Shown here piece by piece: positions 1-64,000 of a stretch of 64,000 nucleotides of DNA. Origin of the DNA: Iphione sp. A-MEVVRFRX5 (Eukaryota); contig OZ320315.1 of the NCBI GenBank assembly GCA_976226885.1, positions 97,526,001 to 97,590,000 on the forward strand, given 5' to 3'. Position numbers and translations under genes: made by a program. The first letter of the stretch is position 1; each line of letters begins with the position of its first letter. The notes under the pieces are model-generated. The model was given only the letters and a program-made list of their open reading frames with translations. It did not search any database and was not told the origin of the DNA.

Positions 1-975
1 GGCACCTGTTTCAAATTGCCTTCCTCTGACTCGATACAGGTGTGCATGCTGAATAGCTGATAGAAAGGTACTTTCACCACCTGAATTGTAGCATGTGTAC
101 CATGTTGTTGCAGTTTGGATGTTGGAGGGTCTCAGGGTGCACAAAGTAAAATGTCTTTGGTTTGACAGGCTGCATGTCCTCACACATATGATCAAGCAAC
201 CTGACAAGAAGAGCTGTGTCTGGTAGATTATCATGACTGTCTGCTTCACTTAACAGCTCACGAATCACACAGGGAGATGGTTTTAGAAGATCAGCAGCAG
301 CTTGGTCCTTCACTTTCTTACAAACTGTTTCTTGTGTTCTAACCCAATATCAGGAGGATGTGTGTGTCCTGCTTTTTCATAATGGAACTCTGACCTATGT
401 TGGAGGACAGCTCTTTGACACTTGGCTGACTTCTTGCTGCATTTCCAGTTGATAGTGTGCTTGCCCGTCACCTGAGATAGTACCCAATGTTATCTGTCAG
501 GAGGTCATTCCCATTTCTCAATGCTCCTTTAAGAATCTCAAACTTTGGCTGTTCAATGGACACAGGAAGCTCTGGGTGGTTGCAGTCAAAATCCACTTTA
601 TCTAGTTGCACATCAGCAGCAACTGAGAATTTAATGGGAACTTGGTCACCTCATGTAGGGAGAGTCATGTCAAACTCATCTTGCCAGCTGAAGTCCCTCG
701 TGGTAAGGTCCTGCTGCTCATCACAGTGTCATTCATCTTCTGCTGGTTCAATTTACATATCACTGGCATTAGTCATATTCTCCACAGAGACACATGAAGC
801 ACTTCCAGTGTTGCAGCTAAACATCTCCCCATTGCAACTGTTGATAGAAGGACCTTGAGATATCAGTGTTGCACACACTGTGCTACCAACCACCACAGAA
901 GTCACAAGCCAATGACAAGAAGTAACTTCTGGAAGTAACTTCTTTTGTGCAGAAAGCACATGTAAACCTTGGTGT
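1..975 (-). mobile_element. Decayed Mutator-like (MULE) transposase with PHD finger, FLYWCH zinc finger and start of the DDE domain; runs off the window edge
   Basis: Minus-strand translation across frameshifts: CAFC..SLACDFCGGW*HSVCNTDISRSFY..WKCFMC (PHD, ~785-960); FEILKGALRNGNDLLTDNIGYY..WKCSKKSAKC..GHTHPPD (FLYWCH, ~345-550); KDQAAADLLKP; then TWY/ATIQVVKVPFYQLFSMH..KQVP (MULE D-G-T-F region, 1-105). Stops and frameshifts present. Confidence 0.85.
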
Positions 976-1089
976 TGTCATCATAAGACCGGTTTTAAGA
1001 CTGATGATAACTTGCTACCCCATGTTTATACCACTGCTGCTCACCATCAAAGAGCCTTTATATTCACTTTGATAATTACAGGTGATGAA

Positions 1090-2010
1090 AGATCATACTA
1101 GGATGAGGGGGTAGCAGACCAGGTGCCCTGAGCCTTTATTTTTTTCATTAGCGCACCCAGTTGTTGTAAATTTGTAGCCCCCCCCCCCTCTTGTCTAAAG
1201 CTATGGATTGAGCCGTGCGACGGATCATAGCCTAGCGATCTATCAATGATTCTGAGGATATCTGAGGATATCTGATATTACTTGCATCTGAAAGGGCCTC
1301 TTTTGTACAGGATCCCTGAATAATGGTTGGGGGTGCTCGTCTACTGGATCTGCATCACACATCTGTTCCAAAAGGGCAGTTGGGCAATACATTTTACCTG
1401 CTATCCTCTGCACGAGAATGAATCTAGCCTGGTTCTGCGAAAATGTTTTTGACAATGCTGTGCTCTCATGACCAAATGCAATGTCCTGCCTAGTCGACTG
1501 CTTATTACAATCGTATTCAATATACCACTTTGTAAATATGTTTGACTGACGAACAGGTGAATAATGCAATACGCTAAATATTGCCTTTAGCACTGTTGCT
1601 AATAGCCCCATCCTATGGCAGAATTCAATGTGTTTTTTAAACGTTCAAATGTAACTGACCACATTCATCATACAACGTGGAGGTATGTTCCTCTTTACCG
1701 ACATTATTGCTGTAGTGACCTTGATACGCTGACACGCCTGGTAGCTATGCTGGTCGACGACGAGCCTCATCATCCTCAGGGCCGATACATGCTGCTCAAC
1801 TACTCACTGGGGAGATGAATTTGTTTAAATACTCAATGTACAAACATATATCATCTGGACAAATCGGTTCCATCAACATATCATAATGTGAAAAGAATCC
1901 TAGGGCTAATTTAAACATACAGAGCCTGGCTCGGTGTGTGGACTGAGTTACCCCCTGCTGCTGTCGTATGGCTGCCTGCTGTGCTAGCTTTGTTAACCAT
2001 GGGTTTGTAA
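1090..2010 (-). pseudogene. Tyrosine recombinase (YR) of a Ngaro/DIRS-type retrotransposon, decayed
   Basis: ORF 1243-1611 reads VLKAIF..SPVRQSN..TRQDIAF..SKT..IAGKMYCPTA..QPLF; downstream across a frameshift LGYDPSHGSIHSFRQEGGGAT..IKAQGTWS..Y; upstream AAIRQQQG..MFKLALGF..ICLYIEYL..SP and VSALR. Matches the R-K-HxxR-W-Y pattern of YR retroelement recombinases. Confidence 0.8.
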
Positions 2011-2718
2011 TTAAAATTGGAGAATATGGTTAATGTCGCCATTTGTTGGAGAGACCCTTCTGATGGTTGGGAATTGATTGAGGAATCTTGTACGGCCTTG
2101 TACTTTGGCAGGTGGTCTAACCTAGAAAGAGCATAATAATAATAATAGATTTTATTGATTCCAACTATCGTCCTATCGGACGGTCTACATTGTGTGGAAT
2201 ACCAATACAAGACAATGTCTGATATTTAAATGACATAGTCGGGGGATAAATGAATATTTACACGTGACAAATGGATGATTGTGATATAATAGTAAGACAT
2301 TCATAGTTACATTCATAGTGTTCAGTAGAGCTTATCAGCCAAGGTATAGCATAAGAGTCCAGTGGTCAAATTGATCAGTCATGTTGCTAAAGAGTGGCTC
2401 AAGTTTATTCCAGTATTTTGCTCCTTGAAAAATAATTCCCTTCCTACAAACTTCATTCTTTGGAAGTATCTGATGTAGTAGTGGTCCATCTGCTCCTCTA
2501 GTGACTGAATCAGGCCTGAGTGGTAATAATCAAATCCGTATTGCTCTGAACATTGTTTTGATAATTATATGAATCCTTCGAACATAGGTGCTCTGGATAC
2601 CCAGATGCATATGCAGGTCCTTATTCTGTAGCTCATAAGCTTTTAGTTTTCTTTTTTGTCTCATGTTGTATATGATCCTCAAAGACCTGTTTTGCAGTGG
2701 CTGTATCTTTGCTTGTGT

Positions 2719-5121
2719 TTAAACAGAGCAGGCTGTGAGATACATGGTACTATAGTCTATCAGTGGCTGTAAAGTTGTTTTGTATAGCATCAGTGCAGTC
2801 TCAGGGGTGACATTACTTTTGATTTTGTTGAATTGGTAAATCTTTGTAGATAGTCTTTTGCAAACACTGTCAGCCTCTGTATTGAAGGACAGTTTATTAT
2901 CAATATTTATACCAAGATATTTGTAATTGTCAACCACTTTGAGATCTTGACCGTACAATTTAATAACAGGTTCATCAGATCCACAAGAGTGCTTTCCAAT
3001 TATTATGATTTGTGATTTGCTATCATTAATGGCCAATTTATGTGAGTTGCACCAGAGTTCTAACTCATCACAAGCCTTGGTCATTTTAGCAGTCAGATCC
3101 TTTGGACTAGACGCTTGAGTGTAAATGACAGTGTCATCAGCAACTAGTATAACAGGTTCACTGATGAACCATGTCAAATCATTGATGTATAGTGAAAATA
3201 GGAGGGGACCTAAGGTTGAACCTTGAGGCACACCACATTTAACCTCTCTGTTGCCAGATACAGCATTGTTACAACAAACTTGTTGCAACCTGTTAGATAG
3301 TCACAGAACCACGATAGTGTGTTCACAGTTGAATTCATTCTTTAAAGTGTCGATCAGTAGATCATGATTAACAGTATCGAAGGCCTTTTTCAGGTCTATG
3401 AATAATAGGCCAGAAATTTTATTATTTATTGCTTTGTATTGGTCATTCAGAAGTTTAAGTACAGCAGAGTGTGTACTTCTGTTATGCCTGAATCCAAACT
3501 GTGTATCTGAGAGAAGTGAGTGCTCTTCTAGATATCCATACAACTGGTTATAAACAAGTTTCTCCAATATCTTTGCAAATACTGATAGTTGAGAAATGGG
3601 CCTGTAATTCGTCGGATCAGAATGAGAACCAGATTTGAAGAGTGGAATCACTGTTGCAGTTTTCCAGTCAACCGGTACTTTGCTGGATTTAATTGAAATA
3701 TTAAGCAAATGTGTCAACTGGTTAACAGACTGTCCAAGAATGATTTTGAGTATTTTTGTACTCAGTCGTGGTACATTTGATGCTTTGCTTGATTTAAGAT
3801 TCAACAATACCTTAGCAACCTCACTTCTTGTAATTTCTCTGAGCGAGAATTCATCATAAGGTGTCACGTTTGAGACTGGACTACCAGAGGTATTTGCTAC
3901 AGGGACATTATTCATGATGTGATATCCACAGTTAGTGAAATGAGCATTGAACATGTCAGCCACACCGGATGGATCCTCACTTGCCCCAGTTAAAGTGATA
4001 TGATTTGACTTCTTAGGTTTCACACCAGTCAGTGATTTAATTGAGTCCCACATCTTTGAGGGGCATTTTCTGTTTCAATCTTAGCTTGTGTATATCGTTC
4101 TTTATGTAGTTTTACATTTTTGATGAGGTCATTTCGTAGCTTTCTTGCTATGTTGATGGTATCCTCATCCTTCCTTTGTTTAGCTTTTTTGAGGTAGTAA
4201 TTTTTTAGCCTAATTTGTTGAAGAAGTTGTTTAGTCATCCAGTGAAGAAATGATCAGCCATCATGAGAATATTTGAGTAATATACTCTCCATGCCTCTTC
4301 AACATCAGTAGTATTATAAAGATGATACCAATTAAGGCTGTCCAGATAGTTTTTTAAGTCTTCTGTGTCATAGTTATCTATTCTACTTCTAATGTAACGA
4401 ACTTGAGGTTGTTCCTTGTCTACCTTGGTTTTCTGTTTTTTCTTTATAATAAATGCAACATAATGGTAGGATAGATGGGCATCAAATGTACCTGCTTTCA
4501 TGATATTTTTGATGTTTGAGAATAACACATCAATCAGGCTGTTTCTATAAATACCTGGCCTAGTCGGTTCATCAATACGTAAGACAAGCCCATATGACAG
4601 AAAGAGTTGTTTGAGATCAGCTGAAGACTTGCAGGATTTATCAAGCATGCTAATGTTAATATCTCCTGCCAATAAGACATCTCTCCTGTTATCGATTGAT
4701 CCTAATATTGACTTGATTTTGGCTGTAAAATTTGGTATGGAACCTGCTGGTGGACAATAGCAGTTGTTTTCTTGTGATTGGCTGGTGTTAACAGTACACA
4801 TTGGATCTCTATTTCAGGGCTACTGATGTTGAGATGTTTATAGTGATTGTCATCAATCATATGCTTGCTGTATATAATAAGCCCACCTCTACTCTTGGAG
4901 GGTTGATCAATGTAGTTTCTATCCAATCTGCTAGCATTGTATCCTTCAAATGATATTAGATTAGAAGTAATGTTTGGCATGAGCCATGTCTCCTGAATAC
5001 AAATTGTATCCATGTTGTTATTAACAAGTATCACATTTAGTAAGGAGGCCTTTCTATAGAGAGATCGTATATTAAGCTGACATAACTTGGCACCCTTTAT
5101 GTCTTTAATGGAGTCAACCAT
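2719..5121 (-). pseudogene. LINE ORF2 remnant: apurinic endonuclease plus reverse transcriptase, broken into at least 5 frames
   Basis: LCQLNIRSL, ICIQETWL, RLDR..SRGG, LAGDIN, PTR..SLIDVLFSN (APE); WKTATVIPLFKSG..PTNYRPIS, QFGFR, FIDLKKAFDTVNH, GVPQGSTLGPLLFSLYINDL, VADDT, YKYLGINID (RT). Confidence 0.95.
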
Positions 5122-5460
5122 GTTAGAACAATTAATATATATCTACATAGACAAAACAGCAAATATAAATGGGCACATAGGCCCACAAACACTTGGAATA
5201 ATATGAATAACCTTGGCTTGAGGGCTAGACAAGAACACAAGTGAATGGTATAGATAGTCGACACTGTGTGATGAAATGATAACATAGTAACAGATGCAAA
5301 TATGGTATCAATATTGACTAAATACATTAGTTAAGTGTTAATGAGAGTTTATTGTGGTAACTTGGTGTGCTTCAAGAAAAGAACAGTATGTTGAACTATA
5401 CATAGATTCAGATAAGTACAAAATGTGAATATGAGCAGAGATTTTGAGGTAAAGTGATTC

Positions 5461-5761
5461 ACCATCATGATCTGACTCGCATATGCAACTAATGCGCAGA
5501 CATGATGCAATGAACGATGAGGTAAATTTATTTACCATCATCCAGTACAACAAGTAGACTGAAGTGCCTTGATGAAATAATATACCATGATATGCCATCA
5601 TGATCTAACTCACATATGCTACTTATGCGCAGACATGATGCAATAAACGATGAGGTAAATTTATTTACCATCATCCAATGCGACAAGTAGCTGAAGGGCC
5701 TTTATGAAATAATACAAAACGTGGTAGTATTAGAGAATGAGGTAAATTAATTTACCATCAT
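5461..5761. repeat. ~133-bp tandem repeat (2 copies plus a partial) in the LINE inter-ORF spacer, each with a palindromic core
   Basis: GATGAGGTAAAT-TT-ATTTACCATCATC at 5516-5542 and 5649-5675; variant at 5737-5761; flanks of the first two copies also align. Confidence 0.85.
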
Positions 5762-5786
5762 GCTGATTGAAAGAGAGACTAATTAA

Positions 5787-6430
5787 TCAGTTTGGGTTGG
5801 TTGATTTGAGGAATTGCTTGGCCCAAAAGGATGTTGTCTCAGATGTCGGGTGTAATCCATCATATAATTTATTGAAAAAGGCATGATACCTATTACTCTT
5901 GCCCTGATATGTATGAACAGGAGCCTCAACCCATGCAGGAGTAACCTCAAGATAAAGATTGCTTTTAATAATTAGGTTATTTATTTTTTTAATCCCCTTA
6001 ATGAAGGCCTTTTGTGTTTCAGGGTCTACTGGGATGAAGAGGTTATCTGAAGATGAGTAGGTGTTATATTTATCAAAATCAATTGCCGTGATGGGACACC
6101 AGACAATTGGAGGTAGATGGCTAATCTCACTCATGCGCGAGACATGCATTCGAAGAAGCCCTGCGAAATAATTTAATAATTCTTCATCAGTGTCAAATCT
6201 GGGAACAGATCTCCCATCTAGAGAATGTCTCTTGATAAGATCACAGATGCCACAAAAGATGTATATAAGACTATAGTTTTTGATATCCATATCTGTGTAG
6301 ATGGATTTGGTGATACGATGGAGATCTCCGCCTGGAAGTATTCGGACTTCATAACAATTATTAACACCATCCACTTCATTGAATTCATCCTGTAGACCTT
6401 TACCACGAGAATCAGAGAGAATCAGTATTC
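5787..6430 (-). CDS. SGNH/GDSL hydrolase (esterase)-like ORF internal to the LINE; probable start codon is frameshifted
   Basis: In frame upstream of the called ORF: ILILSDSRGKGLQ (block I); ILPGG (II); YIFCGICDL (III); LYDGLHPT..W (V). About 214 codons without an internal stop. Confidence 0.75.
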
Positions 6431-6520
6431 ATCATGGAGTGTGTGGTAGATCTAGCTGCTCTCCCTGCAAGAAATTAATATAGGGGATATTGGAGCTTGC
6501 TAGTGAGCATAGAAGTTGAA

Positions 6521-7758
6521 TTAAATTTCACTACAAATTTGCATCCAAATCCTTCCTAAGGTATTTTCACCTTTGTGATTGTTGGATCTAAGGTGTTTGG
6601 ATAGAATACCCACTCCAGATGCGAAGAATGAATCAGAGCTTTTTTCTTTGTGTCCTTAAGGAACTTTTGAGATCTGGGTTGTTTTTCAGCTTGATTAATA
6701 ATTTTTTCAGTTCCTTACCATCTTGCGGCTCAGCTTTAGTTGATTTGGGCAGGGTGTTCCTGATATTGATAATCTTTTCAATCGAATGTGTTTCAGTCAC
6801 AGATTTGGCAAGATTGTTTCGTCCCACTTGTTTCGCCTGGTCATACACAAGCGCATGAGTAACCATTGGTAGCGTTATGCAATCGACCTGAATCGGTGTT
6901 GGATAGTCATTGCACAATGGCGAATGCTTACTTTCAAAATAAACATGCGAGCCTGTTACTACAGTAGTAGCAGATGTTAGGTTCAACTCTTTTGGTAATA
7001 GGTGAATCTGGGTATGGTGATAATTTTTTCCATCAATAATGAAGAAAAGGCCAAAGACGGCCGACTTGAAACCCTTGTGCTTTGCAAGGTTAGCTATCAG
7101 TTTCAAATCCTTTTGAATTCTAACTGCTTCAGTGGGGAGATCCTCACTTATCCAAATATTTGGATGTTCTTTAGCTAGATTAAACCTGTTCTTGAAAATC
7201 ATGTCCCTGTGCTCAATACGTGAGAATTGGACTAGCATAGTGGGGGTCTTGAGCTTGTTAACAGGGTAGGCGTCTCATAGCTTGGAATCGGATAGCTTGG
7301 GTGAAATGTCTCTTAATAGATTGCCTACTTGTTGTTTGACAGTAGTGGAATTGTTGATATTGAAACCATGTATGATTAGGTTTGCCCTTCTATTCTTGAT
7401 CTCTGTGTCAAGATATAGGTTTTTTAACTCATCCACCTGAGCTTTTAGTTTAAGGTTTTCGTTCTTGTGAAAAATAGTTGTGGCGAAGTCTTTTTCCTTA
7501 TTTCCTTCTGTGCTGATTTTAGTTTACCCTTTATGTTAGAGGGAGATTCAATATTTGCAATAGGAGAGGGAATGGAATGATTATTAGTGGTAGTACCATC
7601 AGTTCCCTTGGTGTCGACGTACTCGGCCCGCCGCTGGTTATGTTGACCAGGCTGGAATCAGTGGGTGACCCGTCAGGTTTAGCAGTGACCACGCCTTGAC
7701 CAGTCGTGCTAGGCACCGGACTTCCTTTGTTCCTCGTACTCCTCTCTTTTCCTGCCAT
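6521..7758 (-). pseudogene. LINE ORF1 (coiled coil / RRM-CTD type) with C-terminal NADAR (YbiA-like) domain, frameshifted
   Basis: LVQF..HRDMIF..IWISEDLP..FIIDGKNY (ORF1 RRM/CTD); then YFESKHSPLCNDYPTPIQVD..YDQAK and, after frameshifts, SDSFFASGVG..KGENTLGRIWMQI* ending at 6521. Confidence 0.75.
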
Positions 7759-7942: not shown

Positions 7943-9700
7943 CTTATCTTTAGCTCTGCGATATGTACAAATATGTACGAGCATCGATTGTTGCATAGAT
8001 ATCAGAGAACTCAATAATTGAATGGTATTTTAGACCTATCATCTTGATTGCGAATGCTACATTGATGTCTTCCAATCCTTACTGGCTGTACCTGCTCTTG
8101 TGTCATGGTTTGGGGCTGTTGGGGTTGAGGTTGGTACACTGGCTGAGCCGCCACCCCCTGTTTTGTCTGGTCAAGCCACTCCTGTGACCCCAACATCTGC
8201 AGTAAAATCCACAGCCCCTGCTCTTGCAGATGAAGCAGCAGCAAATGGTTTCCTCTCTAATTGGCCCAATAAAGCCAAGTTCTCCTTCACCTGCTTCACC
8301 TTCCCTAGAAGATCATTTCCAAACAGGAAGCGGGGTGAAGGAGGACAATCTTCAGACACCAGTCTTTTAAAAGCAGGAGGCAAGGAAGGCTTGACCTCCT
8401 CCCTCCGATGCTTAATCAAGGCCTGGTGTGCAGATTCGCCCAAGAGCAGTGCATCCACAAGTGCATCCTGTGCAACCTTAGCCCAGGCAAGATGCTCTGC
8501 CATGGGAGCCACCTATTGGAAGGCCCTGCCAGCGGCAACCATGGAATCCATGACATCACCCCCAATATGCTGGAGCGTTCATTCTCTAGCTTGGTGCTCC
8601 TTGTCCAGGATGTTGGCAAAGAGTAAATCATTCAGTCTTCACACCTGGAGGTGCTCCGCTCCCTCTGGCATATGGTACATTTGTTGGTATACAGAAAACT
8701 TGTAGCTTTAGTACCAGTCTCGAGTATAAGCCCCTGCGGCCGTGAGTGAGGCATCACAGAACAACTCCGTGTGCTCATATGGAATGCTGATGGGTGTGTA
8801 GCCATTATATTGAATGTTTATGTGACGTATATAAGAAATCTTATAAACCAAGTAAGATCCTCCCAGTATTGACATAATAACCAAGCAACAAACAACCGTG
8901 CTGGTTTGACACATCGAGCCACAAAATTAAGAAGACCCAGTAACTTCTGATTTTTTCTGAATGTGACTCTTTTTCCAACTCAGTGTTTGACGAACATGCG
9001 TGAGTACCGACTCTATTTTTTCAGGAGGACATACATCCTCATTGCATCAATGTCAAATATAATTCCTAACCATTTAATTAACCTTCTTGGAGGAACACTC
9101 TTGTCTGTTGCTAGCACTAAACTCAGGGATTGCACAAATGTTATACAATACTGAAAGTCATGTTGGGCTTTTTCCAGTCCATGGGTATAGAACAGAAAAT
9201 TTTGCAAATAGACAAAACCTCTAATTCGCAACACCTTCTTAAGATGCGATAATATTCTCTGCGTAACCAGTTGTAGGAACATTGAGGAATATCTGGTGCT
9301 GATTTGGAGTTTCTTCTCAAAATAACAATTTTGTTGAACCTAACAGCAGCCAATCTAACGGATCTACTTTGAACAGACAGTACGCTCTCTTTAGATAGAC
9401 CAGACATATAAATCCAATGGATTTTTCGCGATCACTGAAACGAGATGTGGGGTAGAAGGCAACACAACGTTAGCATATGCATCAAAATAATTTTCTGATG
9501 TGTATGTGAGTGTTAACCGCACTAAATGTAACATCTACTATAATTCTCTTATCTACCGGACCTTCCTTCGCTCTCGTCATCATAGGGCTGACCGAATACC
9601 ACAGGTTGAAAGGTGGAGATCTAAATGGACCTAAAAGGGTGTCATATTTCAACTCTGTGCCTGCTGGAAAAGAATTAGATGATTGACTTACAACCCCATA
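7943..9700 (-). mobile_element. Ngaro/DIRS-type reverse transcriptase and RNase H remnant (interrupted by the gag fragment at 8105-8700)
   Basis: TLLGPFRSPPF..SPMMTRAK..KRIIVDVTF; FVYLQNFL..KSVPP..WLGIIFD; LFCDASLTAAGAY (RNase H); LEDINVAFAIKMIG and FVHIA; DALSR can be reconstituted across the LINE insertion. Confidence 0.75.
8105..8700 (-). mobile_element. DIRS1-type gag fragment
   Basis: YHMPEGAEHLQV*RLN..LQHI..DALVDALLLGESAHQALIKHRREEVKPSLPPAFKRL..P..FLFGNDL..KVKQVKE resembles the DIRS gag block DA..LLG....RRE..KP.L..LFG.DL. Confidence 0.7.
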
Positions 9701-16300: not shown

Positions 16301-16329
16301 CAATGTAAACATGGTGGAGTTCAGGGTTC

Positions 16330-42100: not shown

Positions 42101-42109
42101 TCCACATGT

Positions 42110-51375: not shown

Positions 51376-53910
51376 CATTAAAGAGTTTTATGTTATCACA
51401 TTAATGTGTGGTTGTAGACCATCTGATGTACTAGCTGTAATGTATATGGATCTCGACATTACAGCTAGTACAAGTGTATCAATGGAGTACTTCACCATTG
51501 GGTGCTCTTGTAGGGCATCCTACAATACATCTTGCACATTTATTATAGACTTTCCTGAGTTTCATTATCTTTCCTTTAGGTAAGCCACAGAAAACAGGTC
51601 CTATATAATCTATACAAGGATAGATGTACATTTTAATTAAATTCCCCCTAAGATGGACAGGAAAGTAAGATTTCAGTTTGCTTAGATTATTAGCAGACAT
51701 CCACATTTTCGAGACTGTTGCATTTAGAGATTCTGACCATGATAATTTCTCATTGATAGTGTAGCCTAATACTTTAACAGAACTTGACCGTTTGAGTGTA
51801 TTACCATCATGACAGATATCAGATAGATTAGGGCGGTGTTTCCCTATAATGCAGTAACTGCTTTTTTCATGACTTAGGGAGAGGCTGTTTTCGAGGCACC
51901 AATTTATGATATATTTGTATGTTATGCACATATTTTCTTCAAGATTTTTGGTATTTTCCCCTCTTACTACACAGGTGATGTCATCTGCATACAACATTAT
52001 GTTTGTGCATGGGGGTGGATGACAGCAGACGTCATTTATAGCCATTGCGAATCCCAGGGAACCGAAGGTGCTGCCTTGAGGAATCTCATTCTGTTGTTTG
52101 AGTTTGGATGAATACAATTTACATGTACATACTGTTCCCTACCTTCAAAATAATGATTTACTAGTCCTATTACATTGGGTTCAGCCCCTTCTGCCTGAAG
52201 TACTTTAATGATAATGTCATGATTTAGTAGGTCAAAAGCCTTCGTAATGTCAAAGGCAATGACTGCTATTAATTTTTTTTGATTCTGATACCACTGCATA
52301 TATTGTGTAATATTTCCCCAATAGCTGTTTTGGTGGACCGTTCTTTCAAGAAACCATGCTGGTGCCTGGACCAGAACCCTATACGGAATAGCTCTTCACA
52401 TTTTTCAGACACTTTTCCTGGGAGGGGGAGGGTGCTAATTGGTCTATAGTTACTAATTGGTCTATAGTTAAGTCTTGTTTGCCTCTCTTGTGTACAGGTA
52501 TTACTCAAGCGACCTTCCAATCCTTAACGTACGTTCCAGTCTGTAACATACTATTAAACAAAGTAGCCAGGTAGGGCGCTAGGATAGATAGAGCATCTTT
52601 CAGGACTGTAGTGGTCAGTTGAGGGATATTACTATTTTGCTTACAGTCAATGGTACTTACTATTTTTACGTCGTCTGCCGTATTGATCCTCCTGATTCGG
52701 ATGTCATCACTCCCTTGTCTGGTTCGGTGGTAAGGCTTAGTTGCCATTTATTTGAGATGCTCTCAATAGTATTTATGAAGTAGGAGTTAAATTTGTCCGG
52801 GAGCTTCATTATTTCCTTGTATGGTAATTAATGGACTAGTGTTACTATTACCTGTTAAGTCATTGATTGTTTTCCAAAGTAATTTTGGATTTATTGAGTG
52901 TTGTTGCAGTCTACTGTAGAAATAACTTTGGTAGACTCTTTTCAGTTCTGATTTAACTGTTTTGTCGAGAAATTTATAAATATTGTGAGCATCAACATCC
53001 TTGAACTGTTTTGCCTTGTTGAAGAAGTACCTCCTGTCTTTGAATAGTTCTACCCTATTTTTGCCTAATTTTACTCTTCTTCTACCTTTTTTTCTTTTAC
53101 TCATATGCTTCTCGGGACATAGTTCATCGTATGACAGAGCAGGTCTGGAGATTCAGGGAGAACAGTATTCAACCTTTTTTCAATTAGCTCCCTTAATCTT
53201 GAATACGAGTAATTTATCTTGTCACGCGTTACCTGCTTAGGGTTTGACTGATAGATGATACGTTTACCAGTTTTATAGTCTATGGCAACCCCTAAATGAT
53301 CACTTTATGATGTATTAATTACTCTTGCGTTGTTGAGGGCATAACTGTTAGTGAACATTAGATCGTTAATTTTATGGCTATCAACCATTGCACTACATGT
53401 GATCTGCTGTACCAGGTTGTACTTACTCATCTTACTGATGAGTCTCTTAATTTGAGGGTGGCTGTGGCTGCCATCTATCCAATAATTCAGTGAACTCTGA
53501 AATGAACCTGGTAATAGAGCAATCTGGTGGACGATACAGTAACATTAATGTGAGGGGTTTGAGTTTGCCACAGGAGATTTTCACAGTCAATAGTTCAAAC
53601 AAATCAGTATTATGACAAGCATCAACAACCATTTCACATATGCAGTTATCTTTGACATACATCAATAGACCACCCCCTCTACATTTTTTATTTGAGTCTC
53701 TATCCTGTCTTACGGTGGTGTATCCATTGATGTTAATATTGCGATCAGGGGTTTTACTACTTGACCATGTTTCTGTGAGACATGTTATAAATGCAGATAT
53801 GAGAATATCATCTTTAATAATTTGAATTTTTTTTATAGATTCTATGAACATTGAACATATATACACAATACTTCATGATTAGTCAATACAATTGATATGG
53901 ATGTATGCGT

Positions 53911-54522
53911 TTAAAAGAAGCGAAGATAATATTCCACAAGGAATTCATCAATATTTTCGATCCATTGATGAGTGATATCAGGGGGGAGCTCATCTTCCAG
54001 ACCAATCAGTTCATTTCTAAACACAGTTTGATAACCTAAGGTCTCATTGATCAGCGTGAAGGTGTCAGGTGTGTAGAAGCCATTCCGATTGTTTATTATT
54101 TCCACCTGACCGTTGAGAGTTGCTAAGTGAGCATTCAGGCATCTCTGCTGTTTCCAGTCTTTCTCACCAATCTGGATACCATGAACATGTAGGAAAACAA
54201 TATCATGGAGAGGCAGCTTGTGTATAGCCTTGACAATGTAGGACATCTGTTCACATAAGTCAATCTGAAGAGAGATGTGCGTGGGGTACCTGATTCTAGG
54301 TCCTGCATTTGTCTGATCCAGTAACGTGTGGAGACCCAGGTAGATGAAGGTAATATCAGCACTTGGGAGGTGAGCGTCTCTCAGGTGTTCACACAAATCC
54401 CCGAATGCTGCCTCAGGGATAATGACATTCGTCCAGGTGAATCGATCCCCAAAGAAATTATCTGCCATCCAACCCAGTTCATGGCCATGGTTGTCAGTCG
54501 CAAGATTCACCTTCAATTTCAT
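53911..54522 (-). CDS. Intact 203-aa ORF between ORF1 and ORF2; SGNH-fold-like, catalytic motifs substituted
   Basis: LATDNHG (in place of DS), FIYLGLHTL (in place of GxND), EDELPP..W (in place of DGLHP..W); same position in the element as the SGNH ORF at 5787-6430. Confidence 0.55.
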   Translation of the reverse strand: MKLKVNLATDNHGHELGWMADNFFGDRFTWTNVIIPEAAFGDLCEHLRDAHLPSADITFIYLGLHTLLDQTNAGPRIRYPTHISLQIDLCEQMSYIVKAIHKLPLHDIVFLHVHGIQIGEKDWKQQRCLNAHLATLNGQVEIINNRNGFYTPDTFTLINETLGYQTVFRNELIGLEDELPPDITHQWIENIDEFLVEYYLRFF

Positions 54523-56270
54523 GTTGACTCTAAAGGAAATACAAGTTGATAGGCGAGAAATTTGTACTATTTCAGTGAAAAACTAGATTGGGATGGATTA
54601 TGACAGTTAGGCCCTTAACGACTGCCTTTTTTCCTTTCCTCCTAGCCAGGCTTGCTAACTCTTGTAAATTTTGGTAAATGTCTTTAGCCTCCTTTGGGAT
54701 GTCCTCTTTCAGGAAAATGTAGGCATATTCCTCGATATGCTTTAGTTTGAACCTGCTTCAATAGGTTTTGCTCCTTGCCTCAATAGTAGCAAATTCAATT
54801 TTGACTGGTCTCTCTTTTCCTTTCTGAGGTTTGCCCAGCCTTACAACACTTTTGATGTCATTGTCACTAGCACTATTGTTAATCGATGTGACTATGTCTT
54901 GTATGGCCTCATAAATGTTAAATTCCTGACTGTCAGGTAGGCCATAGACTATTAGGTTTTTCATCCTATCATGTGTCTCCTTCACTAGCTTGTTCTCATC
55001 TTGATCTTCCCCTTGGTATATTTCTTGCTGGTTGGAGGTATCGGACTTGATCAGGGTGTTGACGGGGATTTTACTTTGGGTATCCCTTTCAAGTTCTCCA
55101 ATCCTATGTTCTAGGTTATTCATCCTGCTGTTAGCATGCTCTAAGAGTTTGATGAGTTTGGCATTGTCCAATACTAATTTTGGGATAAATATTTCCTGAT
55201 TTTTTTTATTTTTCTTCAGCTAGATCGTTAATCTTTTTTACCTCATGCAGTATGTACTGCTCATTCTCTAATATAGTTAATATAATGGTAGAATGAAGAG
55301 GATAGTCACCCTTACCCAGTAGCATGTTGTTGTTGGTGTGGTCACCCTTGTGTGGTCGCCCAGGGTTGCTGTCAGTAGGGTCCGTATGGGTGGATGATGA
55401 TAGAGGAATCCGAACGGTCGTTTTCACCATTGTGTGCGTCAGGCCAGTGGTTATATTGGATTTTTCTTTTTTGGATCTGATATTCCTTACATGGGACTGC
55501 AAGGAGCCAGCTCTGTGTGCTCGTTCCCTTTGTCTTGATAGTGTAGTTTTACCCGATTTTAGTTTTGCCATAATGCCATTTTAATTGTTGTTTATAGCAT
55601 TATTAGTGTAGAACCCCCTCGCAGATACGTCCGGTCCCTCCGGAGCAATCATATGACACCGTATATAGACCACAGGCACTCCCATAGGTGTTATGTGATG
55701 AAAGCCTAATACGTTTCTTACCTCGGGTGCTCAGCAGATGTTCAATAGTGTCAGGATTTTGTTTGATTCTGCCTCTCGAAATATTCTAGATAGTACCCTT
55801 CTCAATGTTCTTCCGATGCTCAGATGTGAGAAAAGAGACATCCAGTCATTTTGCCTGTGCAGGGTCCTGTGTCAGTTTGATTTTCCTTTCTGTTTAAATA
55901 TCATGAAACACACATGCCTTGGCAGTTTGCAGCGCATGCTCGGCTGTTCTGTGTGTTACCACATTGAGGGTGATGGGTGTGGCGTGGAGAGGAGACAGCT
56001 TGCAAATAGGGTATTAGCTCTTTCCATTGTTAATCCATGCTTGATTGTTGATTGTGCTGCAGGTATCCTGTCTAAAAGAAGTAGATCTATACAGATTTTG
56101 CAGTGTTTTATAAAAGTAGTATAATTAGGTCTCATGTTTAGAATCAATGTCAAATGATCATGAAAGTCCAAATGTCAAATATGGAGTAGACACTCACAAA
56201 TGTAGACAGTAGTAGTACACACCGTGTCTAGTTTCTATTAGTTAAACTATAATTTTACAACACAATAAGT

Positions 56271-56604: not shown

Positions 56605-56790
56605 TTACACATCATAGTCTAGTGCAAGGGAAGTAGTGTACCTGGCCCTAGGTCCACCCTGGTAGTACTTCACAGGATCGTAGAAGCCTAGGCAGAAGGT
56701 CGTGACATCAATTCCCAGAAGGGGGGGGGGGGCATTATCAAGCAGACCTGTGCCCTCTGTGTACTTGGTTTTTAGGAGAAATTGTCTTTC
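56605..56790 (-). pseudogene. Third fragment of the SGNH-like LINE accessory ORF family
   Basis: TKYTEGTGLLDNAP..IDVTTFCLGFYDPVKYYQGGPRARYTTSLALDYD, nearly collinear with 50395-50760. Confidence 0.75.
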
Positions 56791-57482
56791 TTCTGTCTCC
56801 TTAACATCAGAACAAAGGCGAGTGGCATTTGATTGAAGTCTTCCACTGAATTCCTCAAGAAACCACTGCAGTAATGCCAAGCAATCAAGAGAAATCTTTA
56901 CCTAAATCATGTAATCGCATTTATTAGGGAAAAATCTGGTGAACATGATATAACATAGTTTTCTACTGGCATGTGTGCCCAAAGGTATGTAGTATTTTTC
57001 TTAGGGTACAGATGGCAAATTCAGTGCTGTATTAAAGTACATTTCAAATCAGGAACGGTGATTCTTGTCCAAACCCCAGATGTACATTCCAAAACGGGAA
57101 CTTTGATTGAGTGGCCAAGTTCAGACAGAACAGGGCTGTCTTCTCTTGTGAAACTGTTGGGTATTCTTGTACTCTCCAAGACAGGACCTCGGACAGAGAA
57201 GATGGCATCAGCGATATTAGGATCTCCATCTCTTGTAGGATTATCACAGGTCCATGTGCTTTCCAGGAAAGCAACTCTCACAGAGTATTGGCTAGAGTTT
57301 TGCCTTGGCTGGACAGCTTTCTTGCGTGCAACATTTGTCCATTTTGTTCAACCTGACAACTTTGAATATACCCATTTGATTCTTTTTTGGCGTGTATATT
57401 CATCATTATTACATACAAATTAAGTGTTTATTTTCCGAATATTTTGAAATTTTCTAGGATGGCTCTGGATGAAAAAAAGTAC

Positions 57483-58600: not shown

Positions 58601-58616
58601 CTTCAGAGACAGTATG

Positions 58617-60880
58617 TTTGAATTTGAATTTGAATACTTTTATTTCTGGAGGTGATTTAAATACATATGTACAATTCCAGATTTTTGTGCAGCATGTTGG
58701 ATGATAATGAACAGGACTCCATACATTACATCTTAAACACCATATTAGAGAGCTAAATAAACACAATGAGCATCTTTGTTTTGTAACATAATCAGTATGT
58801 TCATAATGCTCATGGCAGGGGAATAAGATGGGGAGAGAACCAGACAACGTTGGCAACTTGCAAGCCAACCTCCACCAAGATACGTGCTCTTCATATACCC
58901 ACGTGTCAAGTAGCAATAGATATGAAGAGACCTCAACCAAGATCCATACATTTCATGCTCCTAGTGGTTAATAAGGTACTGCTATTTGGCCACAGTAAAC
59001 CATAGTTAGGGATGGCAGAGACATCAACCGAGATCCACTATTAACCACATCTCTGAGATGAATTTACCTCAACCAAGATCCACACATCTACTTAACCATC
59101 TAATTCTCCCTGCCATACTTGTTGTAATGTTGCCTAATTGGTAAGATATAAGTTTTAATGATGCAGATCATTATTTTTCGTGGAATCATGCATTTCACCT
59201 TATTTAAGTACCACAGTTTTCCACACATCAATGAGAACTTTCCTTTGAGGAATTGGTCTAGACACAGGCTAGAATCTAGAAATACACCCAGGTATTTATA
59301 GCCTTCAGCTTGCTTTCATTCATCACCACCCATTATACATTTCAACTTTTGCAACTCTTGCCGCTACTGAAGCAACACTATTTCAGTTTTTTTGACATTG
59401 ATACAAAGTTTGTTCTCACTGAACCATCTTTGGAGGTCCTCACAGATACATTGCAATTGGTAACTTAGTCCCTCGATATTAGCACTAGGGCTATAAACCA
59501 CTGTATCATCAGCATAGAGAATAGTAGATCCTCCCTCAAAACACTGAACAATAGGGCCCCCAGAGTAGAACCCTGGGGTACCCCACAAGTCACCTGTAAC
59601 TCACTGCTGACTTTGCCATTCACAAAAGTCCTGACTCTTCTTCCTCTTAGATAACTATTAAACCATTCAATGTTTTTCCTGACACCTTTCAGATATAGCT
59701 TATTGAGAATCAAAGTATGATTTGCACTATCAAATGCCTTGTGGCAGTCTACGAACACAGCACCAACCACTTGTTTTTGATTCAAAAAAGTGTAAATATC
59801 ATTTATTATGTGGGTAACTGCTGAATGTGTGCTTCGTCCCTTACGAAAACCATGTTGACTTCTAGAAATTAGGTCATTTTCATGTAGGTAACTACTTAAT
59901 TGAGTGTACACCACCTTTTCTAAGATTTTTGACAGAACCGGCAACAGACATATCGGCCTGTAATTATTTACCATTTCCTTTTCTCCACCCTTAAACAATG
60001 GCTTTATCAGACCAACTTTAAACTTGGAAGGGACCTCGTTTGTTGAGATGGAGAGGTTTATTAGCCTATGTAATTGTTCCAGCAGCTCAAATAGTATCAT
60101 TTTAATAGCCCTCATACTTACATTAAACATAGCTGTTTTCTTTGACCCTTGACCTGCTTCAAGATCTCTAACATGGACACATGCTTCAATTCAAATTCTT
60201 CATGTGGTAAACCCTCCCTTTTGCTCGGTCTCTCCAAAGGTTTTACTTAAATTAGCTCCTATCCCAACAAAATATTCATTAACAAAATCAGCAGTTAACT
60301 CTGTTGGGATATATATACCATTGCTCACCAATTGAATATTTTCGTGATCCCTTTGTTTGTCCTCAACTACTGTATTTTTCAACCCATTCCAGAATTTTCT
60401 TGGAGTTTCCTTGTTTTGGTCAAGCAGTTATTCAGTTTTTTCTTATGCAACTCAGAAAGATACATCTTTAGGCTGTGCTGAGCAAGACGTAGCTGCAGCT
60501 TATCGTCCGGACTATTCAACTGCATATACATAGCATATTTCAATTTCTTGCTTTTTATTAATTCTTTAAGTTTATGGTCAGGTGTACAGTGCTTTGGATA
60601 TGTTTGTTTTCTTTGAACAGGGCAGAGAGTATCTACCATATCTTCTACTACTGCGAGAAAAAATTCCGCTGCCGTGTTACAATCCGCCATTGTAGAGGGA
60701 CCAAGCCTAACCACGTTTTGAACATATAACAATCCGTACAATCGGTACAATTCTGTGTTAACATCATAGATGGCCATATTACTAAAAAACGTATCAATAC
60801 ATGACCCACCATGTTTATGCTCACGAGTAGGCATCCACACGTACTGCCTAAGTCCATAGATCAATGCTGTTTCATCTAAT
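58617..60880 (-). mobile_element. 5'-truncated CR1/L2-like LINE (end of APE, RT, 3' UTR)
   Basis: PTR..CIDTFFSN; KGGEKEMVNNYRPICLLPVLSKILEK; QHGFR; FVDCHKAFD; GVPQGS; LYADDT; tail AATAAA plus (TTCAAA)n at 58617-58644. Confidence 0.92.
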
Positions 60881-62315
60881 TCTGTATAGCTTTTCTTACT
60901 GGCTGCAGCAAATAAAGTTACATCATCTGTGTGTGATATCATTTATCATGATTGTAAACAGCAAAGGGCCTAGGATACTGCCCTGTGGCACCCCCTGGCT
61001 TACCGGTTCTATGGTTGATTGTGTTGAGTTACATTCAACATATTTTTTCCTGTTAGCTAGATAGGACCGTACTAGGTCAATATATCCCCTGCCTAGACTA
61101 AGACGTTCCATTTTATCTAGAAGCAGTTCGTGATGTACCACATCAAATGCTTTACTAAAATCTATTAGTATGGCACCAAAGTGTCTATTACTATGGAGAG
61201 CATGATATGCATTAATCAGAAATAGCCCTGTAGTAGTTTCAGTCCCTCTTCCGACCCTAAAACCATGTTGCTGACTTTTAAGTATGGGCCTTGTTTCTAA
61301 GAGTTCAACTAGTTGCCTATGGATTAGTCTCTCAAGTATTTTCCCAATAAGCGGAGGTATTGCTATTTGGGTGATAATTTGACTTACACATTTAATCCCC
61401 TTTTTTCGGTATAGGAAGTCTCTGATACCTTCTGCCACTAATATTAAGGAGTCACGCAGAACACGTATTAGGATTCCCTTTTAACCCCTTGGTTTTCCTA
61501 ATTTAATGGCTTTAATTTCCTTTTGTAGCTCCACCAAGGTGATGGATTTGAGCGATCCATCGACCTGGTGTTTGGTAAAGCTAATTGAAGGTGTATTTGT
61601 TGAAATTTTCTTAGCGGCAGACAGAAAATAGCTACTCAATACATTTGGTACCTCATCGTCCAGCACCCAGGCTTTTGCTTCTTTAATCCTTCTAGTATTT
61701 TTGACTTCACATAACCCAAGTGATGAGCAAAGAGAGGCCCAATAATCTTTAGGATTACGACTCAGATCAGATTATATCTGGACCAAATGCACCTCTAACA
61801 GGTGTTCATACTATTCGATGGGAAAGATTCGTTATTCAGTTTATCAATAAAATACATAGAGAAACTTATGTAGGTACACATGGTTCCACTCCTATAGATG
61901 TGTTTAATGTTAGTGATAATGAGATGAAGGGTGGCAGTCGAGGTTTTATGCATAATTGTTGTTTCCGCTGTTAATTGTGTTACTCCATATTCTTCTAGCA
62001 GGCAGCATAACTTTTCTTTAATAGACGATTCAACACTCCAATCAATATTTAGGTCACCTGCTAGGATAACGTCCAACTTATCTAGTTTTGGGATAGAGTA
62101 GAGAGTATTTCCTAAATAATCTAAAAAATGCAAGAAGTTACCATTTAGTGGCCTATAAATCAATGCTAACAATGATACTATTTAAGCCACACACATTCAG
62201 CAAATTGGGCACAAATGTTGAAATTTGGTATCTGCTCGTATTTAACTGTTGTATTAAAATATAATAGGATGCCACCACCCTTTGATTTATCCATACCAAT
62301 TCTGTCTTGCCTTAC
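60880..62315 (-). mobile_element. Another CR1/L2-like ORF2 fragment (APE to the RT YADD region), cut at 5' by Tigger
   Basis: RQDR..KGGGILLY; IYRP; LAGDLNID; QHGFR; LIDFSKAFDVVHH; GVPQGSILGPLLFTIMINDI; TDDVTLF. Confidence 0.88.
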
Positions 62316-62317
62316 TA

Positions 62318-62743
62318 CAGGAGACTCCGCCTAAAGTGACCACCTAAGGGACTGAGCCTAAGTGGTCGCCTAAGGCATTGATTGGGGTGGGGGGGTCAGA
62401 CCTGAACTGAACGTGAAATGAAGGAATAAAACTGAAATCAAGAAGAACATTCAGAGACATTTATGGCAATAAGAAATGGCTAGGCAGAATATATTAATCT
62501 TATAGACAGACTGTAAAATATCATAGATCATAGTTCCATAGTCACTCTTTCTTAAAAACTGGTGGAGTGTTGGCTGCACTTTGTTTCTTTTGGGCATGGT
62601 TCTTTTCAGGGATGTTGATGATGTCCATGACAGGATCCAAGGCAGGGCAATACCCTTGGGCAGGCAGTACATCCTAACATGATCCAGCATATTTAGGATC
62701 TCATGATGCTTGTGCTGGCTTCCTGGGATGGGATTCTCATCAG

Positions 62744-62781
<38 letters not shown>

Positions 62782-64000
62782 CTGGATTCTACATCTTGCA
62801 CCTGTAGGCCAGCCTTCTCCTTGACCTCTTCAATGAGATGTTGTTCCCACCCCAAGTCATGGGGATCATGAGACAGGCAGTTGGTCCTTTCCTCATAGTC
62901 CTCCCTGGTCAAAGCTGTCCCTGGGAGGTGAAGTCCTTCATGTCTCCATCTCCTCATCATCTTCCTCCTCTGGCTGTGACTGGCTGAGATCAGCATCACC
63001 TGGATCAGATCGGGGGATACTCCTGCCTTCTTGAAGCACTTTAAGACTTTGCTGGCTGGTGCAACCTTCACAGCTGCCTTCATGCAGGTGATGGCCATGT
63101 GGACATCCACACTCTTGATGATCTGCTGGGGGCCTTCTCCACTATCCAACTTGGCCAGCACATGCCTGAGGACAGCCTTGTGATAGTGACTCTTCACACA
63201 TTTGATGATCCCCTGGTCAAGGGGCTCCAGCAGGAAAGGGGTGTTGGCAGGGAGGAATACCAACTTTACATTGGACACCCTCAGGTGATGGGGGTGTAAA
63301 GGGGCATTGTCCAGGATCAATGCCACCTTCCTGCCGTGGGCCTACATCTTCTTGTTGAAGGCCTGGAGCCACTTCTCAAAGATTGAAGAGACCATCCAGC
63401 CTTCTTGTTGGACCTCCATATCACTAGTAAACCTTTCAGGTCCAAATTCCTGAAGGCCTGGGTCTTGCAGCTTTCCCAATGACCAGGAGCTTTTCAAACT
63501 GTCCAGCCATGGATTCACAGGGAGCAAAAGTCAGCCTTTCCTTACTCCTCTTACCCCCAGCTGTGTCACTGCCCTTGACAGCAAGGGTCTTTTCTGGGAG
63601 GACCCAGAAGAAGATACCAGTCTCATCCATGTTGAAGATGTCTTCTTTCTTGTATCCCTCAAAGAGGGTGGGCAGCCTCTCCTGCCACTGCCACACTGCC
63701 CCCTCAGGGACACGGGCCCTCTCTCAAGACACCTTCACCCCTGAGATGCAGTGCCTCTTCATAAATCTTGAGAGCCATTCCTCTCCTTTCCCCAGTTCTT
63801 TGCTGAAATGCATGACTTTCTCCCTGATCAATAATCCAGAGACAGGGACCTGCAAATCCCTGGCCTCCTGAAACCAGGCAAAGACTGTCTCATCCATGGT
63901 GGTGAGGTCAGGGGATAGATGTCTTCTTTTAGTCCTCCATGATGGATGCCTTCCTCTTCAAGATGTTTTGGACTTGTGTCTTGCCTATGTTGAATTCGCT
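62318..64000 (-). mobile_element. pogo/Tigger DNA transposon (3' TIR plus decayed transposase), continues beyond the window
   Basis: TA at 62316-62317 then TIR-like CAGGAGACTCCGCCTAAAGTGACCACCTAAGGGAC; SEFNIGKTQVQNILKRK (HTH), DIFNMDETGIFF..PEKTL..KRSKERLT, ALILDNAPLH..FLPANT..EPLDQGIIKCVKSHY; (GAT)n poly-Asp tract near 62745-62780. Confidence 0.93.

What the first reader, a model, noticed from the sequence alone, without database searches (positions are those of the whole stretch)
1..64000. All assignable transposon fragments lie on one strand: candidate flamenco-like uni-strand piRNA cluster
Seen: 21 of 21 TE fragments with an assignable coding strand or 3' tail are on the minus strand. They span about 7 unrelated groups (CR1/L2, I/Jockey, Ngaro, DIRS, MULE, pogo/Tigger, Crypton) and include nested insertions and DNA transposons. 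If independent, the two-sided chance is 2x0.5^21, about 1e-6, although some fragments may share an origin. Established: uni-strand piRNA clusters such as Drosophila flamenco are diverse, nested TE fragments co-oriented antisense to one long precursor. Inference: a plus-strand precursor here would be antisense to every family, so this may be a master silencing locus in an invertebrate where none is described. Caveats: a giant plus-strand intron can also create antisense bias, and the satellite monomers carry plus-strand AATAAA, which could hinder read-through.
Basis: partly seen in the sequence, partly recalled or inferred. Interest (0 to 1): 0.9.

Follow-up and report, generated by a model that had tools for sequence, protein, structure and literature searches.

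The report
One-strand transposon graveyard, candidate piRNA cluster
Every jumping-gene remnant in this 64-kb stretch whose direction can be read points the same way, which fits a long transcript that makes antisense silencing RNAs (a piRNA cluster), but no RNA data exist here to show it.

Summary
Unbiased six-frame tests found transposon protein domains only on the minus strand. None of 62 plus-strand ORFs hit a TE domain. Among 105 minus-strand ORFs, 18 did (RT, AP-endonuclease, DDE_1, Tc5 HTH). All 61 paralogue matches inside the window at E<=0.01 are co-oriented. I count 11 well-supported separate loci, or 14 with weaker ones. They are at least five divergent LINE lineages, two divergent pogo copies and one DIRS/Ngaro-type ORF1 fragment. 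That gives a two-sided p of about 1e-3 to 1e-4, not 1e-6. MULE, Crypton and 3' tails were not confirmed, and no Gypsy/LTR domain is present. A 23-kb satellite complex fills the middle of the window. Whether the region makes piRNAs cannot be tested with these tools. This scan's first readers separately flagged eight further windows from 556 kb to 60 kb upstream for the same bias, five of them explicitly minus-strand. These notes are unchecked. If they hold, the co-oriented domain spans at least 620 kb, which would argue against chance and against an ordinary intron. Best reading (about 0.42): part of a plus-strand precursor unit of a uni-strand piRNA cluster. Rivals are a giant intron or lncRNA, chance, and an insertion-mechanism bias.

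The parts
2401..7274 (-). Nearly intact multi-ORF LINE. RT at 2401-4074, AP-endonuclease at 4238-5142, then two upstream 213-aa ORFs at 5790-6428 and 6636-7274.
   Evidence: RVT_1 at E 3e-15 and 4e-17, Exo_endo_phos_2 at 9e-7, Exo_endo_phos at 3.5e-5. A 541-aa tblastn HSP to an external LINE RT at E 6e-73. The two upstream ORFs have no Pfam hit. Their SGNH and NADAR labels come from earlier notes and were not tested here.
8174..8698 (-). Fragment of the ORF1 (gag-like) protein of a DIRS/Ngaro-type tyrosine-recombinase retroelement.
   Evidence: 29 homologues in the representative library, best E 4.5e-11. The best homologue, P0006, lies in L001 directly upstream of an RVT_1 gene and a weak Phage_integrase gene. 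All tblastn hits are on minus. jackhmmer E 2e-44.
9016..9339 (-). Weak, eroded RT C-terminal fragment.
   Evidence: RVT_1 at E 0.019, profile positions 125-204. This is a weak hit and counts only in the upper estimate of loci.
12453..12815 (-). ORF sharing a 59-aa motif with 48840-49265(-). Family unknown.
   Evidence: BLASTP 39% identity, pairwise E 8e-7. Local blastp E 9e-5.
13876..37104 (.). Satellite complex. Alternating 412-bp and 485/497-bp units span 14.3-30.75 kb, the longer unit carrying an 85-bp fold-back. Units of about 855-940 bp span 32.2-36.0 kb. The array is bracketed by related direct segments. Its orientation relative to the TEs cannot be assigned.
   Evidence: TRF, self-blastn, anchor spacing. 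AATAAA occurs 34 times on plus and 9 times on minus.
40922..42130 (-). pogo/Tigger-type DNA transposon copy 1 (DDE_1 plus Tc5 HTH), degraded, with no detectable TIRs.
   Evidence: DDE_1 at E 2e-19 and 3e-15. HTH_Tnp_Tc5 at E 0.0017. A 389-aa tblastn HSP to P0001 at E 1e-55. No convincing TIR was found.
42173..42598 (-). Short LINE RT fragment next to pogo copy 1.
   Evidence: tblastn from window RT ORFs at E 9e-9 and 1.5e-8. jackhmmer E 9e-9.
44939..46990 (-). Eroded LINE with an RT C-terminal part at 45325-45678 and a weak AP-endonuclease N-terminus at 46616-46990.
   Evidence: RVT_1 at E 9e-7. Exo_endo_phos at E 0.018. jackhmmer E 4e-35.
48840..49265 (-). ORF related to 12453-12815(-). The overlapping plus ORFs 48288-48818 and 48879-49490 show no coding evidence.
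   Evidence: for the relation. The plus ORFs gave no Pfam hit and nothing in the atlas. No database homologues were found for the minus ORF.
50380..50886 (-). Isolated fragment of the LINE accessory ORF family, the 'SGNH-like' ORF of earlier notes.
   Evidence: tblastn 34% identity to 53914-54582 at E 3e-22, and 76% to 56608-56901.
51482..55580 (-). LINE with several frameshifts. RT at 51482-52888, APE at 53450-53872, accessory ORF at 53914-54582, upstream ORFs at 54761-55580.
   Evidence: RVT_1 at E 2e-10 and 2e-4. Four collinear HSPs to an external RT at E 2e-30. APE paralogy at E 2e-4.
56608..56901 (-). Second isolated fragment of the accessory-ORF family.
   Evidence: 76% amino-acid and 87% nucleotide identity to 50587-50756.
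59103..60942 (-). LINE truncated at its 5' end inside APE, inserted into or against the next LINE in the same orientation.
   Evidence: RVT_1 at E 1e-22. External RT residues 21-483 align over 59136-60427. APE C-terminal similarity of 60382-60942 at E 0.002.
60926..62181 (-). LINE with the RT N-terminal half and APE. Its 3' half is missing.
   Evidence: RVT_1 at E 3e-19 and Exo_endo_phos_2 at E 0.009. External RT residues 64-346 align. APE paralogy at E 1e-6.
62454..63957 (-). pogo/Tigger-type DNA transposon copy 2, only 35-43% identical to copy 1.
   Evidence: DDE_1 at E 2e-14. HTH_Tnp_Tc5 at E 2e-9 in set A3. tblastn to P0001 at E 6e-60. Paralogy to copy 1.

Best explanation
The window lies inside a large TE-rich domain that behaves as one long plus-strand transcription unit, most likely the precursor of a uni-strand piRNA cluster. 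Transposons of unrelated kinds inserted here over a long period. Only copies antisense to the plus-strand transcript survived. Sense copies would bring terminators and splice sites that truncate the precursor. Antisense copies would give the host antisense piRNAs against that family. What is shown: complete co-orientation of independent insertions from several families and ages, including one same-orientation nested insertion. What is inferred: plus-strand transcription, processing into piRNAs, and selection on orientation.
For: - There are no plus-strand and only minus-strand TE domains in symmetric six-frame tests.
- The loci are independent. RT identities between copies are 25-45% and the two pogo copies are 35-43% identical. 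Almost no nucleotide-level self-similarity exists outside the satellite.
- Three mechanistically unrelated classes share the orientation: TPRT LINEs, a cut-and-paste DDE transposon and a tyrosine-recombinase retroelement.
- Ages are mixed. One LINE's RT is broken by a single stop (2722-4074), while other RTs survive only as 40-120-aa remnants. The bias therefore persisted over time.
- No plus-strand exon-like ORF was found.
- Lead only, unchecked: first-reader notes flag eight further windows between -556 kb and -60 kb, five of them explicitly for minus-strand bias. The size implied, at least 620 kb, falls within the 227-1085 kb range of flam-syntenic clusters (PMC10643416).
Against: - There are no small-RNA or transcript data.
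- No promoter lies in the window.
- No Gypsy/ERV content is present, unlike flamenco.
- With 11-14 independent loci the window alone gives p of about 1e-3 to 1e-4, which is not decisive after scanning hundreds of windows.
- The central satellite carries 34 plus-strand AATAAA hexamers, about 1.4 per kb. That is denser than the minus strand of the TE parts. Including the satellite, the two strands carry about equal numbers of AATAAA (52 plus, 49 minus).
- No strand asymmetry of substitutions was seen among 33 satellite monomers (low power).
- In the one annelid profiled, the largest piRNA loci were about 10 kb (PMC8915122).
Confidence: 0.42

Rival explanations
1. The window lies in a giant intron of a plus-strand host gene, or in the body of a long non-coding RNA. 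Purifying selection removes sense-oriented TEs that would terminate or mis-splice the transcript. The region is not a dedicated piRNA source.
For: Antisense bias of LINEs and LTR elements in introns is well established in mammals (PMC3088655, PMC3517506). The TE orientation here is exactly what a plus-strand gene would produce. Outside the satellite the minus strand carries 40 AATAAA against 18 on plus, so sense copies would indeed import signals.
Against: No plus-strand exon candidate was found in 64 kb. From my own knowledge, intronic bias is partial, roughly 55-80% antisense, not 100% over 11-14 loci. DNA transposons usually show little intronic bias, yet both pogo copies conform. The AATAAA excess on minus is fully explained by base composition, with 36 expected. 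The satellite adds many plus-strand AATAAA. If the unchecked neighbouring notes hold, the intron would have to exceed 620 kb.
Confidence: 0.2
2. The co-orientation is chance in a TE-rich, satellite-bearing (possibly pericentromeric) region, picked out because many windows were read. A few locally dependent events, such as nested or adjacent LINE insertions, add to it.
For: Only 11-14 independent loci exist, giving p of 1e-3 to 1e-4 per window. More than 700 windows of this genome have been read, so about one such window is expected by chance. Two LINEs are physically nested or adjacent (59.1-60.9 and 60.9-62.2 kb) and two accessory-ORF fragments are 87% identical, so some loci may not be fully independent. 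Nine of the 12 domain- or homologue-supported loci are LINE-derived.
Against: Symmetric tests found not a single plus-strand fragment, even at E<=0.01. Same-strand hits still outnumber opposite-strand hits in the twilight zone, 19 versus 7 at E 0.01-0.1. The non-LINE elements agree. Eight nearby windows were independently flagged, though those notes are unchecked.
Confidence: 0.2
3. A mechanistic insertion bias sets the orientation at integration rather than selection afterwards. One route is target-primed reverse transcription favouring one strand relative to a unidirectionally moving replication fork. Another is LINEs integrating into sequences of resident LINEs in a fixed orientation.
For: Most oriented loci are LINEs, and one LINE sits inside another in the same orientation. 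From my own knowledge, a modest lagging-strand preference has been reported for human L1.
Against: The reported replication-linked bias is small. It cannot explain the cut-and-paste pogo copies or the tyrosine-recombinase element. The LINE-in-LINE junction lies in the middle of an RT, not in a 3' tail. The LINE copies belong to at least 5 divergent lineages. No tails or microsatellites are present to mediate tail-homology targeting.
Confidence: 0.1

Closest known systems
Drosophila flamenco and flam-like uni-strand piRNA clusters (PMC10643416; FlaHMM, PMC11400887)
   Same: A long TE-rich region in which fragments of many families, some nested, lie almost exclusively on one strand. The possible size of hundreds of kilobases matches the published 227-1085 kb range. 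The setting is heterochromatin-like, with satellite DNA.
   Different: In flam-like loci the strand bias and enrichment are driven specifically by env-bearing Gypsy elements. Here no LTR-retrotransposon domain is found, and the content is LINEs, pogo and a YR-element fragment. No piRNA, promoter or splicing evidence is available. The host appears to be a lophotrochozoan according to earlier notes, which I did not verify.
piRNA clusters annotated from small RNA in molluscs (PMC6128900) and the annelid Capitella teleta (PMC8915122)
   Same: These are probably the nearest host lineages. The clusters are TE-enriched, and uni-strand loci exist.
   Different: The published loci are small. In Lymnaea 307 clusters cover 0.27% of the genome, and in Capitella the largest is about 10 kb with no massive cluster. 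They were defined by small RNA reads, not by TE orientation. No co-oriented TE array of this size is described in those papers.
Antisense orientation bias of TEs in introns of host genes (PMC3088655, PMC3517506)
   Same: The logic is the same: TEs survive preferentially antisense to a transcript whose integrity matters.
   Different: No exon or host gene is detectable in the window. The bias here is complete rather than partial and includes DNA transposons.

Membership tests
Uni-strand piRNA cluster (general) | TE fragments of several unrelated families, co-oriented antisense to one putative precursor | tested here: met
   Zero plus-strand and 11-14 minus-strand loci from LINE, pogo and DIRS/Ngaro-type elements.
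Uni-strand piRNA cluster (general) | Abundant 24-32-nt, 1U-biased, 2'-O-methylated small RNAs mapping to one strand | not testable with these tools
   No small-RNA data are available.
Uni-strand piRNA cluster (general) | A single long Pol II precursor transcript from a defined promoter | not testable with these tools
   No transcript data exist. Any promoter would lie upstream of the window, more than 556 kb upstream if the earlier notes hold.
flamenco-like cluster in the strict sense (PMC10643416, PMC11400887) | Enrichment and antisense bias of LTR/Gypsy (ERV) elements | tested here: not met
   No rve, RNase H, protease, gag or env domain appeared among 167 ORFs scanned on both strands. All RTs with neighbours are LINE-type, adjacent to an AP-endonuclease.
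flamenco-like cluster in the strict sense | Extent of hundreds of kilobases | tested here: inconclusive
   The bias runs from 2.4 kb to 64.0 kb, reaching the 3' edge of the window (the first 2.4 kb has no oriented element). Flanks could not be fetched because the window's ORFs are not in the protein collection. Unchecked notes suggest at least 620 kb.
Intron of a plus-strand host gene | Flanking or internal plus-strand exons, or a spliced transcript spanning the region | tested here: inconclusive
   No plus-strand ORF has a Pfam hit or a homologue. Exons outside the window cannot be seen.
Intron of a plus-strand host gene | Depletion of plus-strand polyadenylation hexamers beyond what composition predicts | tested here: not met
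   Outside the satellite, AATAAA occurs 18 times against 17.3 expected, and TTTATT 40 times against 36.4 expected. The satellite adds 34 plus-strand AATAAA.

The most novel reading that the evidence does not exclude
This window is the distal part of a uni-strand piRNA master locus of at least 0.6 Mb in a lophotrochozoan. It would be flamenco-scale but built from LINEs, DNA transposons and tyrosine-recombinase retroelements instead of Gypsy ERVs. That would show that very large orientation-selected TE traps evolved outside arthropods and vertebrates and are not tied to ERV control in follicle cells.
Probability: 0.35. Interest if true: 0.75.

Novelty: new member of a known kind. Interest (0 to 1): 0.55.

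Why it matters
Large uni-strand clusters with orientation-selected TE content are understood mechanistically almost only in Drosophila. In spiralians the described piRNA loci are small. A verified co-oriented TE domain of hundreds of kilobases that produces piRNAs would give that clade its first tractable 'master locus'. It would also test whether the trap model (capture in antisense, then silencing) holds generally for LINEs and DNA transposons. If the region instead proves to be a giant intron, or reflects an insertion-mechanism bias, a near-100% orientation purity over hundreds of kilobases would itself be unusual and worth explaining.

Tried and rejected
1. Plus-strand coding. All 16 plus ORFs of >=100 aa and 46 of 70-99 aa had no TE domain. 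ORF 8034-8702(+) had no homologue and is the antisense shadow of the minus ORF1 fragment. ORF 48879-49490(+) found nothing in the atlas. ORF 56959-57420(+) found nothing in PDB.
2. Crypton and MULE. No Pfam signal appeared on either strand, even at E<=5 for the candidate ORFs. Atlas and PDB searches for 1246-1644(-) were empty. A DIRS-type YR and RT from L001/L002 used as probes hit nothing.
3. SINE or tRNA heads and structured RNAs. ARAGORN and Rfam found none.
4. 3' tails. There are no A or T runs of >=11 and no terminal microsatellites.
5. TIRs of the pogo copies. No convincing pair was found.
6. Segmental duplication as the cause of co-orientation. This is rejected, because outside the satellite only 19 short direct nucleotide matches exist.
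7. Orientation of the satellite. The similarity of ORF 36917-37441(-) to the monomers is only DNA-level repetition, with no homologues, so the satellite was not counted.
8. Transcription- or replication-linked substitution asymmetry in 33 satellite monomers. None was found, with all complementary pairs at p>0.19. Power was low.
9. Poly(A)-hexamer depletion. Counts are explained by base composition.
10. Walking into the flanks. Ten ATG-started window ORFs are absent from the protein collection, so the neighbouring DNA could not be examined.
Full report
**What the window is.** The window is eukaryotic, has no Ns, and has 35-48% G+C. The middle 23 kb (13.9-37.1 kb) is a satellite complex. Units of 412 bp and 485/497 bp alternate from 14.3 to 30.75 kb, and the longer unit carries an extra 85-bp fold-back. 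A second family with units of about 855-940 bp spans 32.2-36.0 kb. The array is bracketed by related direct segments. The remaining 40 kb or so is made of decayed transposons.

**Checking the observation without choosing a strand in advance.**
- Stop-to-stop ORFs outside the satellite are strongly asymmetric. At >=100 aa there are 46 on minus and 16 on plus. At >=150 aa there are 14 and 5.
- Pfam was run on 62 plus ORFs: all 16 of >=100 aa and 46 of 70-99 aa. No TE domain was found.
- Pfam on 105 minus ORFs gave RVT_1 in 9, Exo_endo_phos(_2) in 4, DDE_1 in 3 and HTH_Tnp_Tc5 in 2. Two more weak hits appeared.
- tblastn of every window ORF of >=60 aa from both strands against the window needs no intact ORF in the target. 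Outside the satellite it gave 61 same-strand and 0 opposite-strand paralogue matches at E<=0.01. Between E 0.01 and 0.1 the count was still 19 versus 7.
- The four plus-plus matches lie exactly over minus-minus homologies, so they are antisense shadows.
- jackhmmer profiles seeded with those proteins, run against all 2,049 six-frame pieces of >=20 aa, found 13 RT pieces, 5 pogo pieces and one ORF1 piece. All were on minus.
- The longest plus ORF, 8034-8702, has no homologue. It overlaps the minus ORF 8174-8512, which has 29 homologues. Plus ORFs at 48.3-49.5 kb and 57 kb gave nothing.

The core observation therefore holds.

**How many independent events.** The pieces group into the following loci, all on minus.
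- A nearly intact LINE at 2.4-7.3 kb.
- A DIRS/Ngaro-type ORF1 fragment at 8.17-8.70 kb. Its best homologue sits directly upstream of an RT gene and a weak tyrosine-recombinase gene.
- pogo copy 1 at 40.9-42.1 kb.
- A LINE RT scrap at 42.2-42.6 kb.
- An eroded LINE at 44.9-47.0 kb.
- A LINE accessory-ORF fragment at 50.4-50.9 kb.
- A LINE at 51.5-55.6 kb.
- A second accessory-ORF fragment at 56.6-56.9 kb.
- A LINE at 59.1-60.9 kb, truncated at its 5' end inside the endonuclease. It abuts the middle of the RT of another LINE at 60.9-62.2 kb.
- pogo copy 2 at 62.45-63.96 kb.

Weaker additions are an RT remnant at 9.0-9.3 kb (E 0.019) and two ORFs sharing a motif, at 12.45-12.8 and 48.8-49.3 kb.

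RT identities between copies are 25-45%, and the two pogo copies are 35-43% identical. Outside the satellite there is almost no nucleotide self-similarity. The loci are therefore separate insertions of different lineages and not duplicates.

With 11 loci the two-sided probability is about 1e-3. With 14 it is about 1.2e-4.

MULE and Crypton were not found. There are no A-tails or terminal microsatellites. No LTR-retrotransposon domain is present.

**Significance in context.** More than 700 windows of this genome have been read. One window at p of about 1e-3 could therefore be chance. However, the scan's index lists first-reader notes of the same kind at -556, -494, -432, -370, -246, -184 and -60 kb on the same piece. 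The notes at -556, -494, -370 and -246 kb explicitly name the minus strand. That is eight of the ten consecutive 62-kb windows from -556 kb to 0, this window included. Three further notes lie elsewhere in the genome.

These are unchecked AI notes, and I could not fetch the flanks. I treat them as a lead only. If correct, the co-oriented domain is at least 620 kb, and both chance and an ordinary intron become poor explanations. No plus-biased window is noted anywhere, which might hint at a reader habit. For this window the symmetric tool tests exclude that.

**What it most likely is.** A bias shared by TPRT LINEs, a cut-and-paste DDE transposon and a tyrosine-recombinase retroelement points to selection on orientation rather than to an integration mechanism. 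So does persistence across ages, from an RT broken by a single stop to 40-aa scraps. The known source of such selection is a long transcript on the opposite (plus) strand. That could be a uni-strand piRNA precursor, where antisense copies are useful and sense copies disruptive. It could also be a giant intron or lncRNA, where sense copies are disruptive.

I favour the piRNA-cluster reading at about 0.42, for these reasons:
- The bias is complete.
- It includes DNA transposons.
- No exon-like plus ORF exists in 64 kb.
- The region is satellite-bearing and TE-saturated.
- The suggested size matches flam-syntenic clusters of 227-1085 kb (PMC10643416).

**Against this reading.**
- There are no RNA data.
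- The region lacks the Gypsy content on which the strict flam-like definition rests (PMC10643416, PMC11400887).
- The satellite carries 34 AATAAA on plus against 9 on minus. Outside the satellite the hexamer counts are explained by base composition.
- No substitution strand asymmetry was seen among the satellite monomers (low power).
- In Capitella the largest piRNA loci were about 10 kb (PMC8915122). Mollusc clusters are also small on average (PMC6128900).

**Rivals.**
- Giant intron or lncRNA, 0.2. Intronic antisense bias is established (PMC3088655, PMC3517506).
- Chance plus local dependence, 0.2.
- Insertion-mechanism bias, 0.1.

**Verdict.** The direction and completeness of the bias hold, but the count, class diversity and p-value were overstated. 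If true, this is a new member of a known kind of system in a clade where no locus of this size is described.

Noticed in passing
window 14291-30750: The satellite has strictly alternating 412-bp and 485/497-bp units. The longer unit equals the shorter plus an 85-bp segment that forms a fold-back, and this fold-back is the only source of inverted self-matches in the window. The plus strand is A-rich and carries 34 AATAAA.
   Followed up: partly
window 32205-35968, 13876-14479 and 36407-37104: A second tandem family with units of about 855-940 bp at 92-96% identity. The whole satellite complex is bracketed by two related direct segments about 73% identical, as if it expanded from one progenitor sequence.
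   Followed up: no
window 51064-51375: A perfect (100%) tandem duplication of a 155-bp unit just 3' of the LINE at 51.5-55.6 kb. It must be a very recent event in an otherwise decayed region.
   Followed up: no
window 59103-62181: A LINE truncated at its 5' end inside the endonuclease abuts the middle of another LINE's RT in the same orientation. The expected 3' half of the interrupted LINE is not found downstream.
   Followed up: partly
window 12453-12815 and 48840-49265 (minus): Two ORFs share a 59-aa motif (39% identity) but have no Pfam hit and no homologue in the large protein database. They may represent an undescribed TE protein family.
   Followed up: partly
window 8174-8698 (minus); L001 6001-9984: The ORF1 protein family of DIRS/Ngaro-type elements has 29 representatives of about 100-540 aa and no Pfam model. 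In L001 it directly precedes RT and tyrosine-recombinase genes.
   Followed up: partly
window 38370-38588 and 56182-56390: A direct repeat of about 215 bp at 73% identity, from an unknown, probably non-coding, repeat family. The two copies are co-oriented like everything else.
   Followed up: no
window 62737-62780 and 49613-49740: A (TCA)n microsatellite of 14.7 units lies inside the pogo copy 2 ORF region. A GAG-rich low-complexity tract lies at 49.6-49.7 kb.
   Followed up: no
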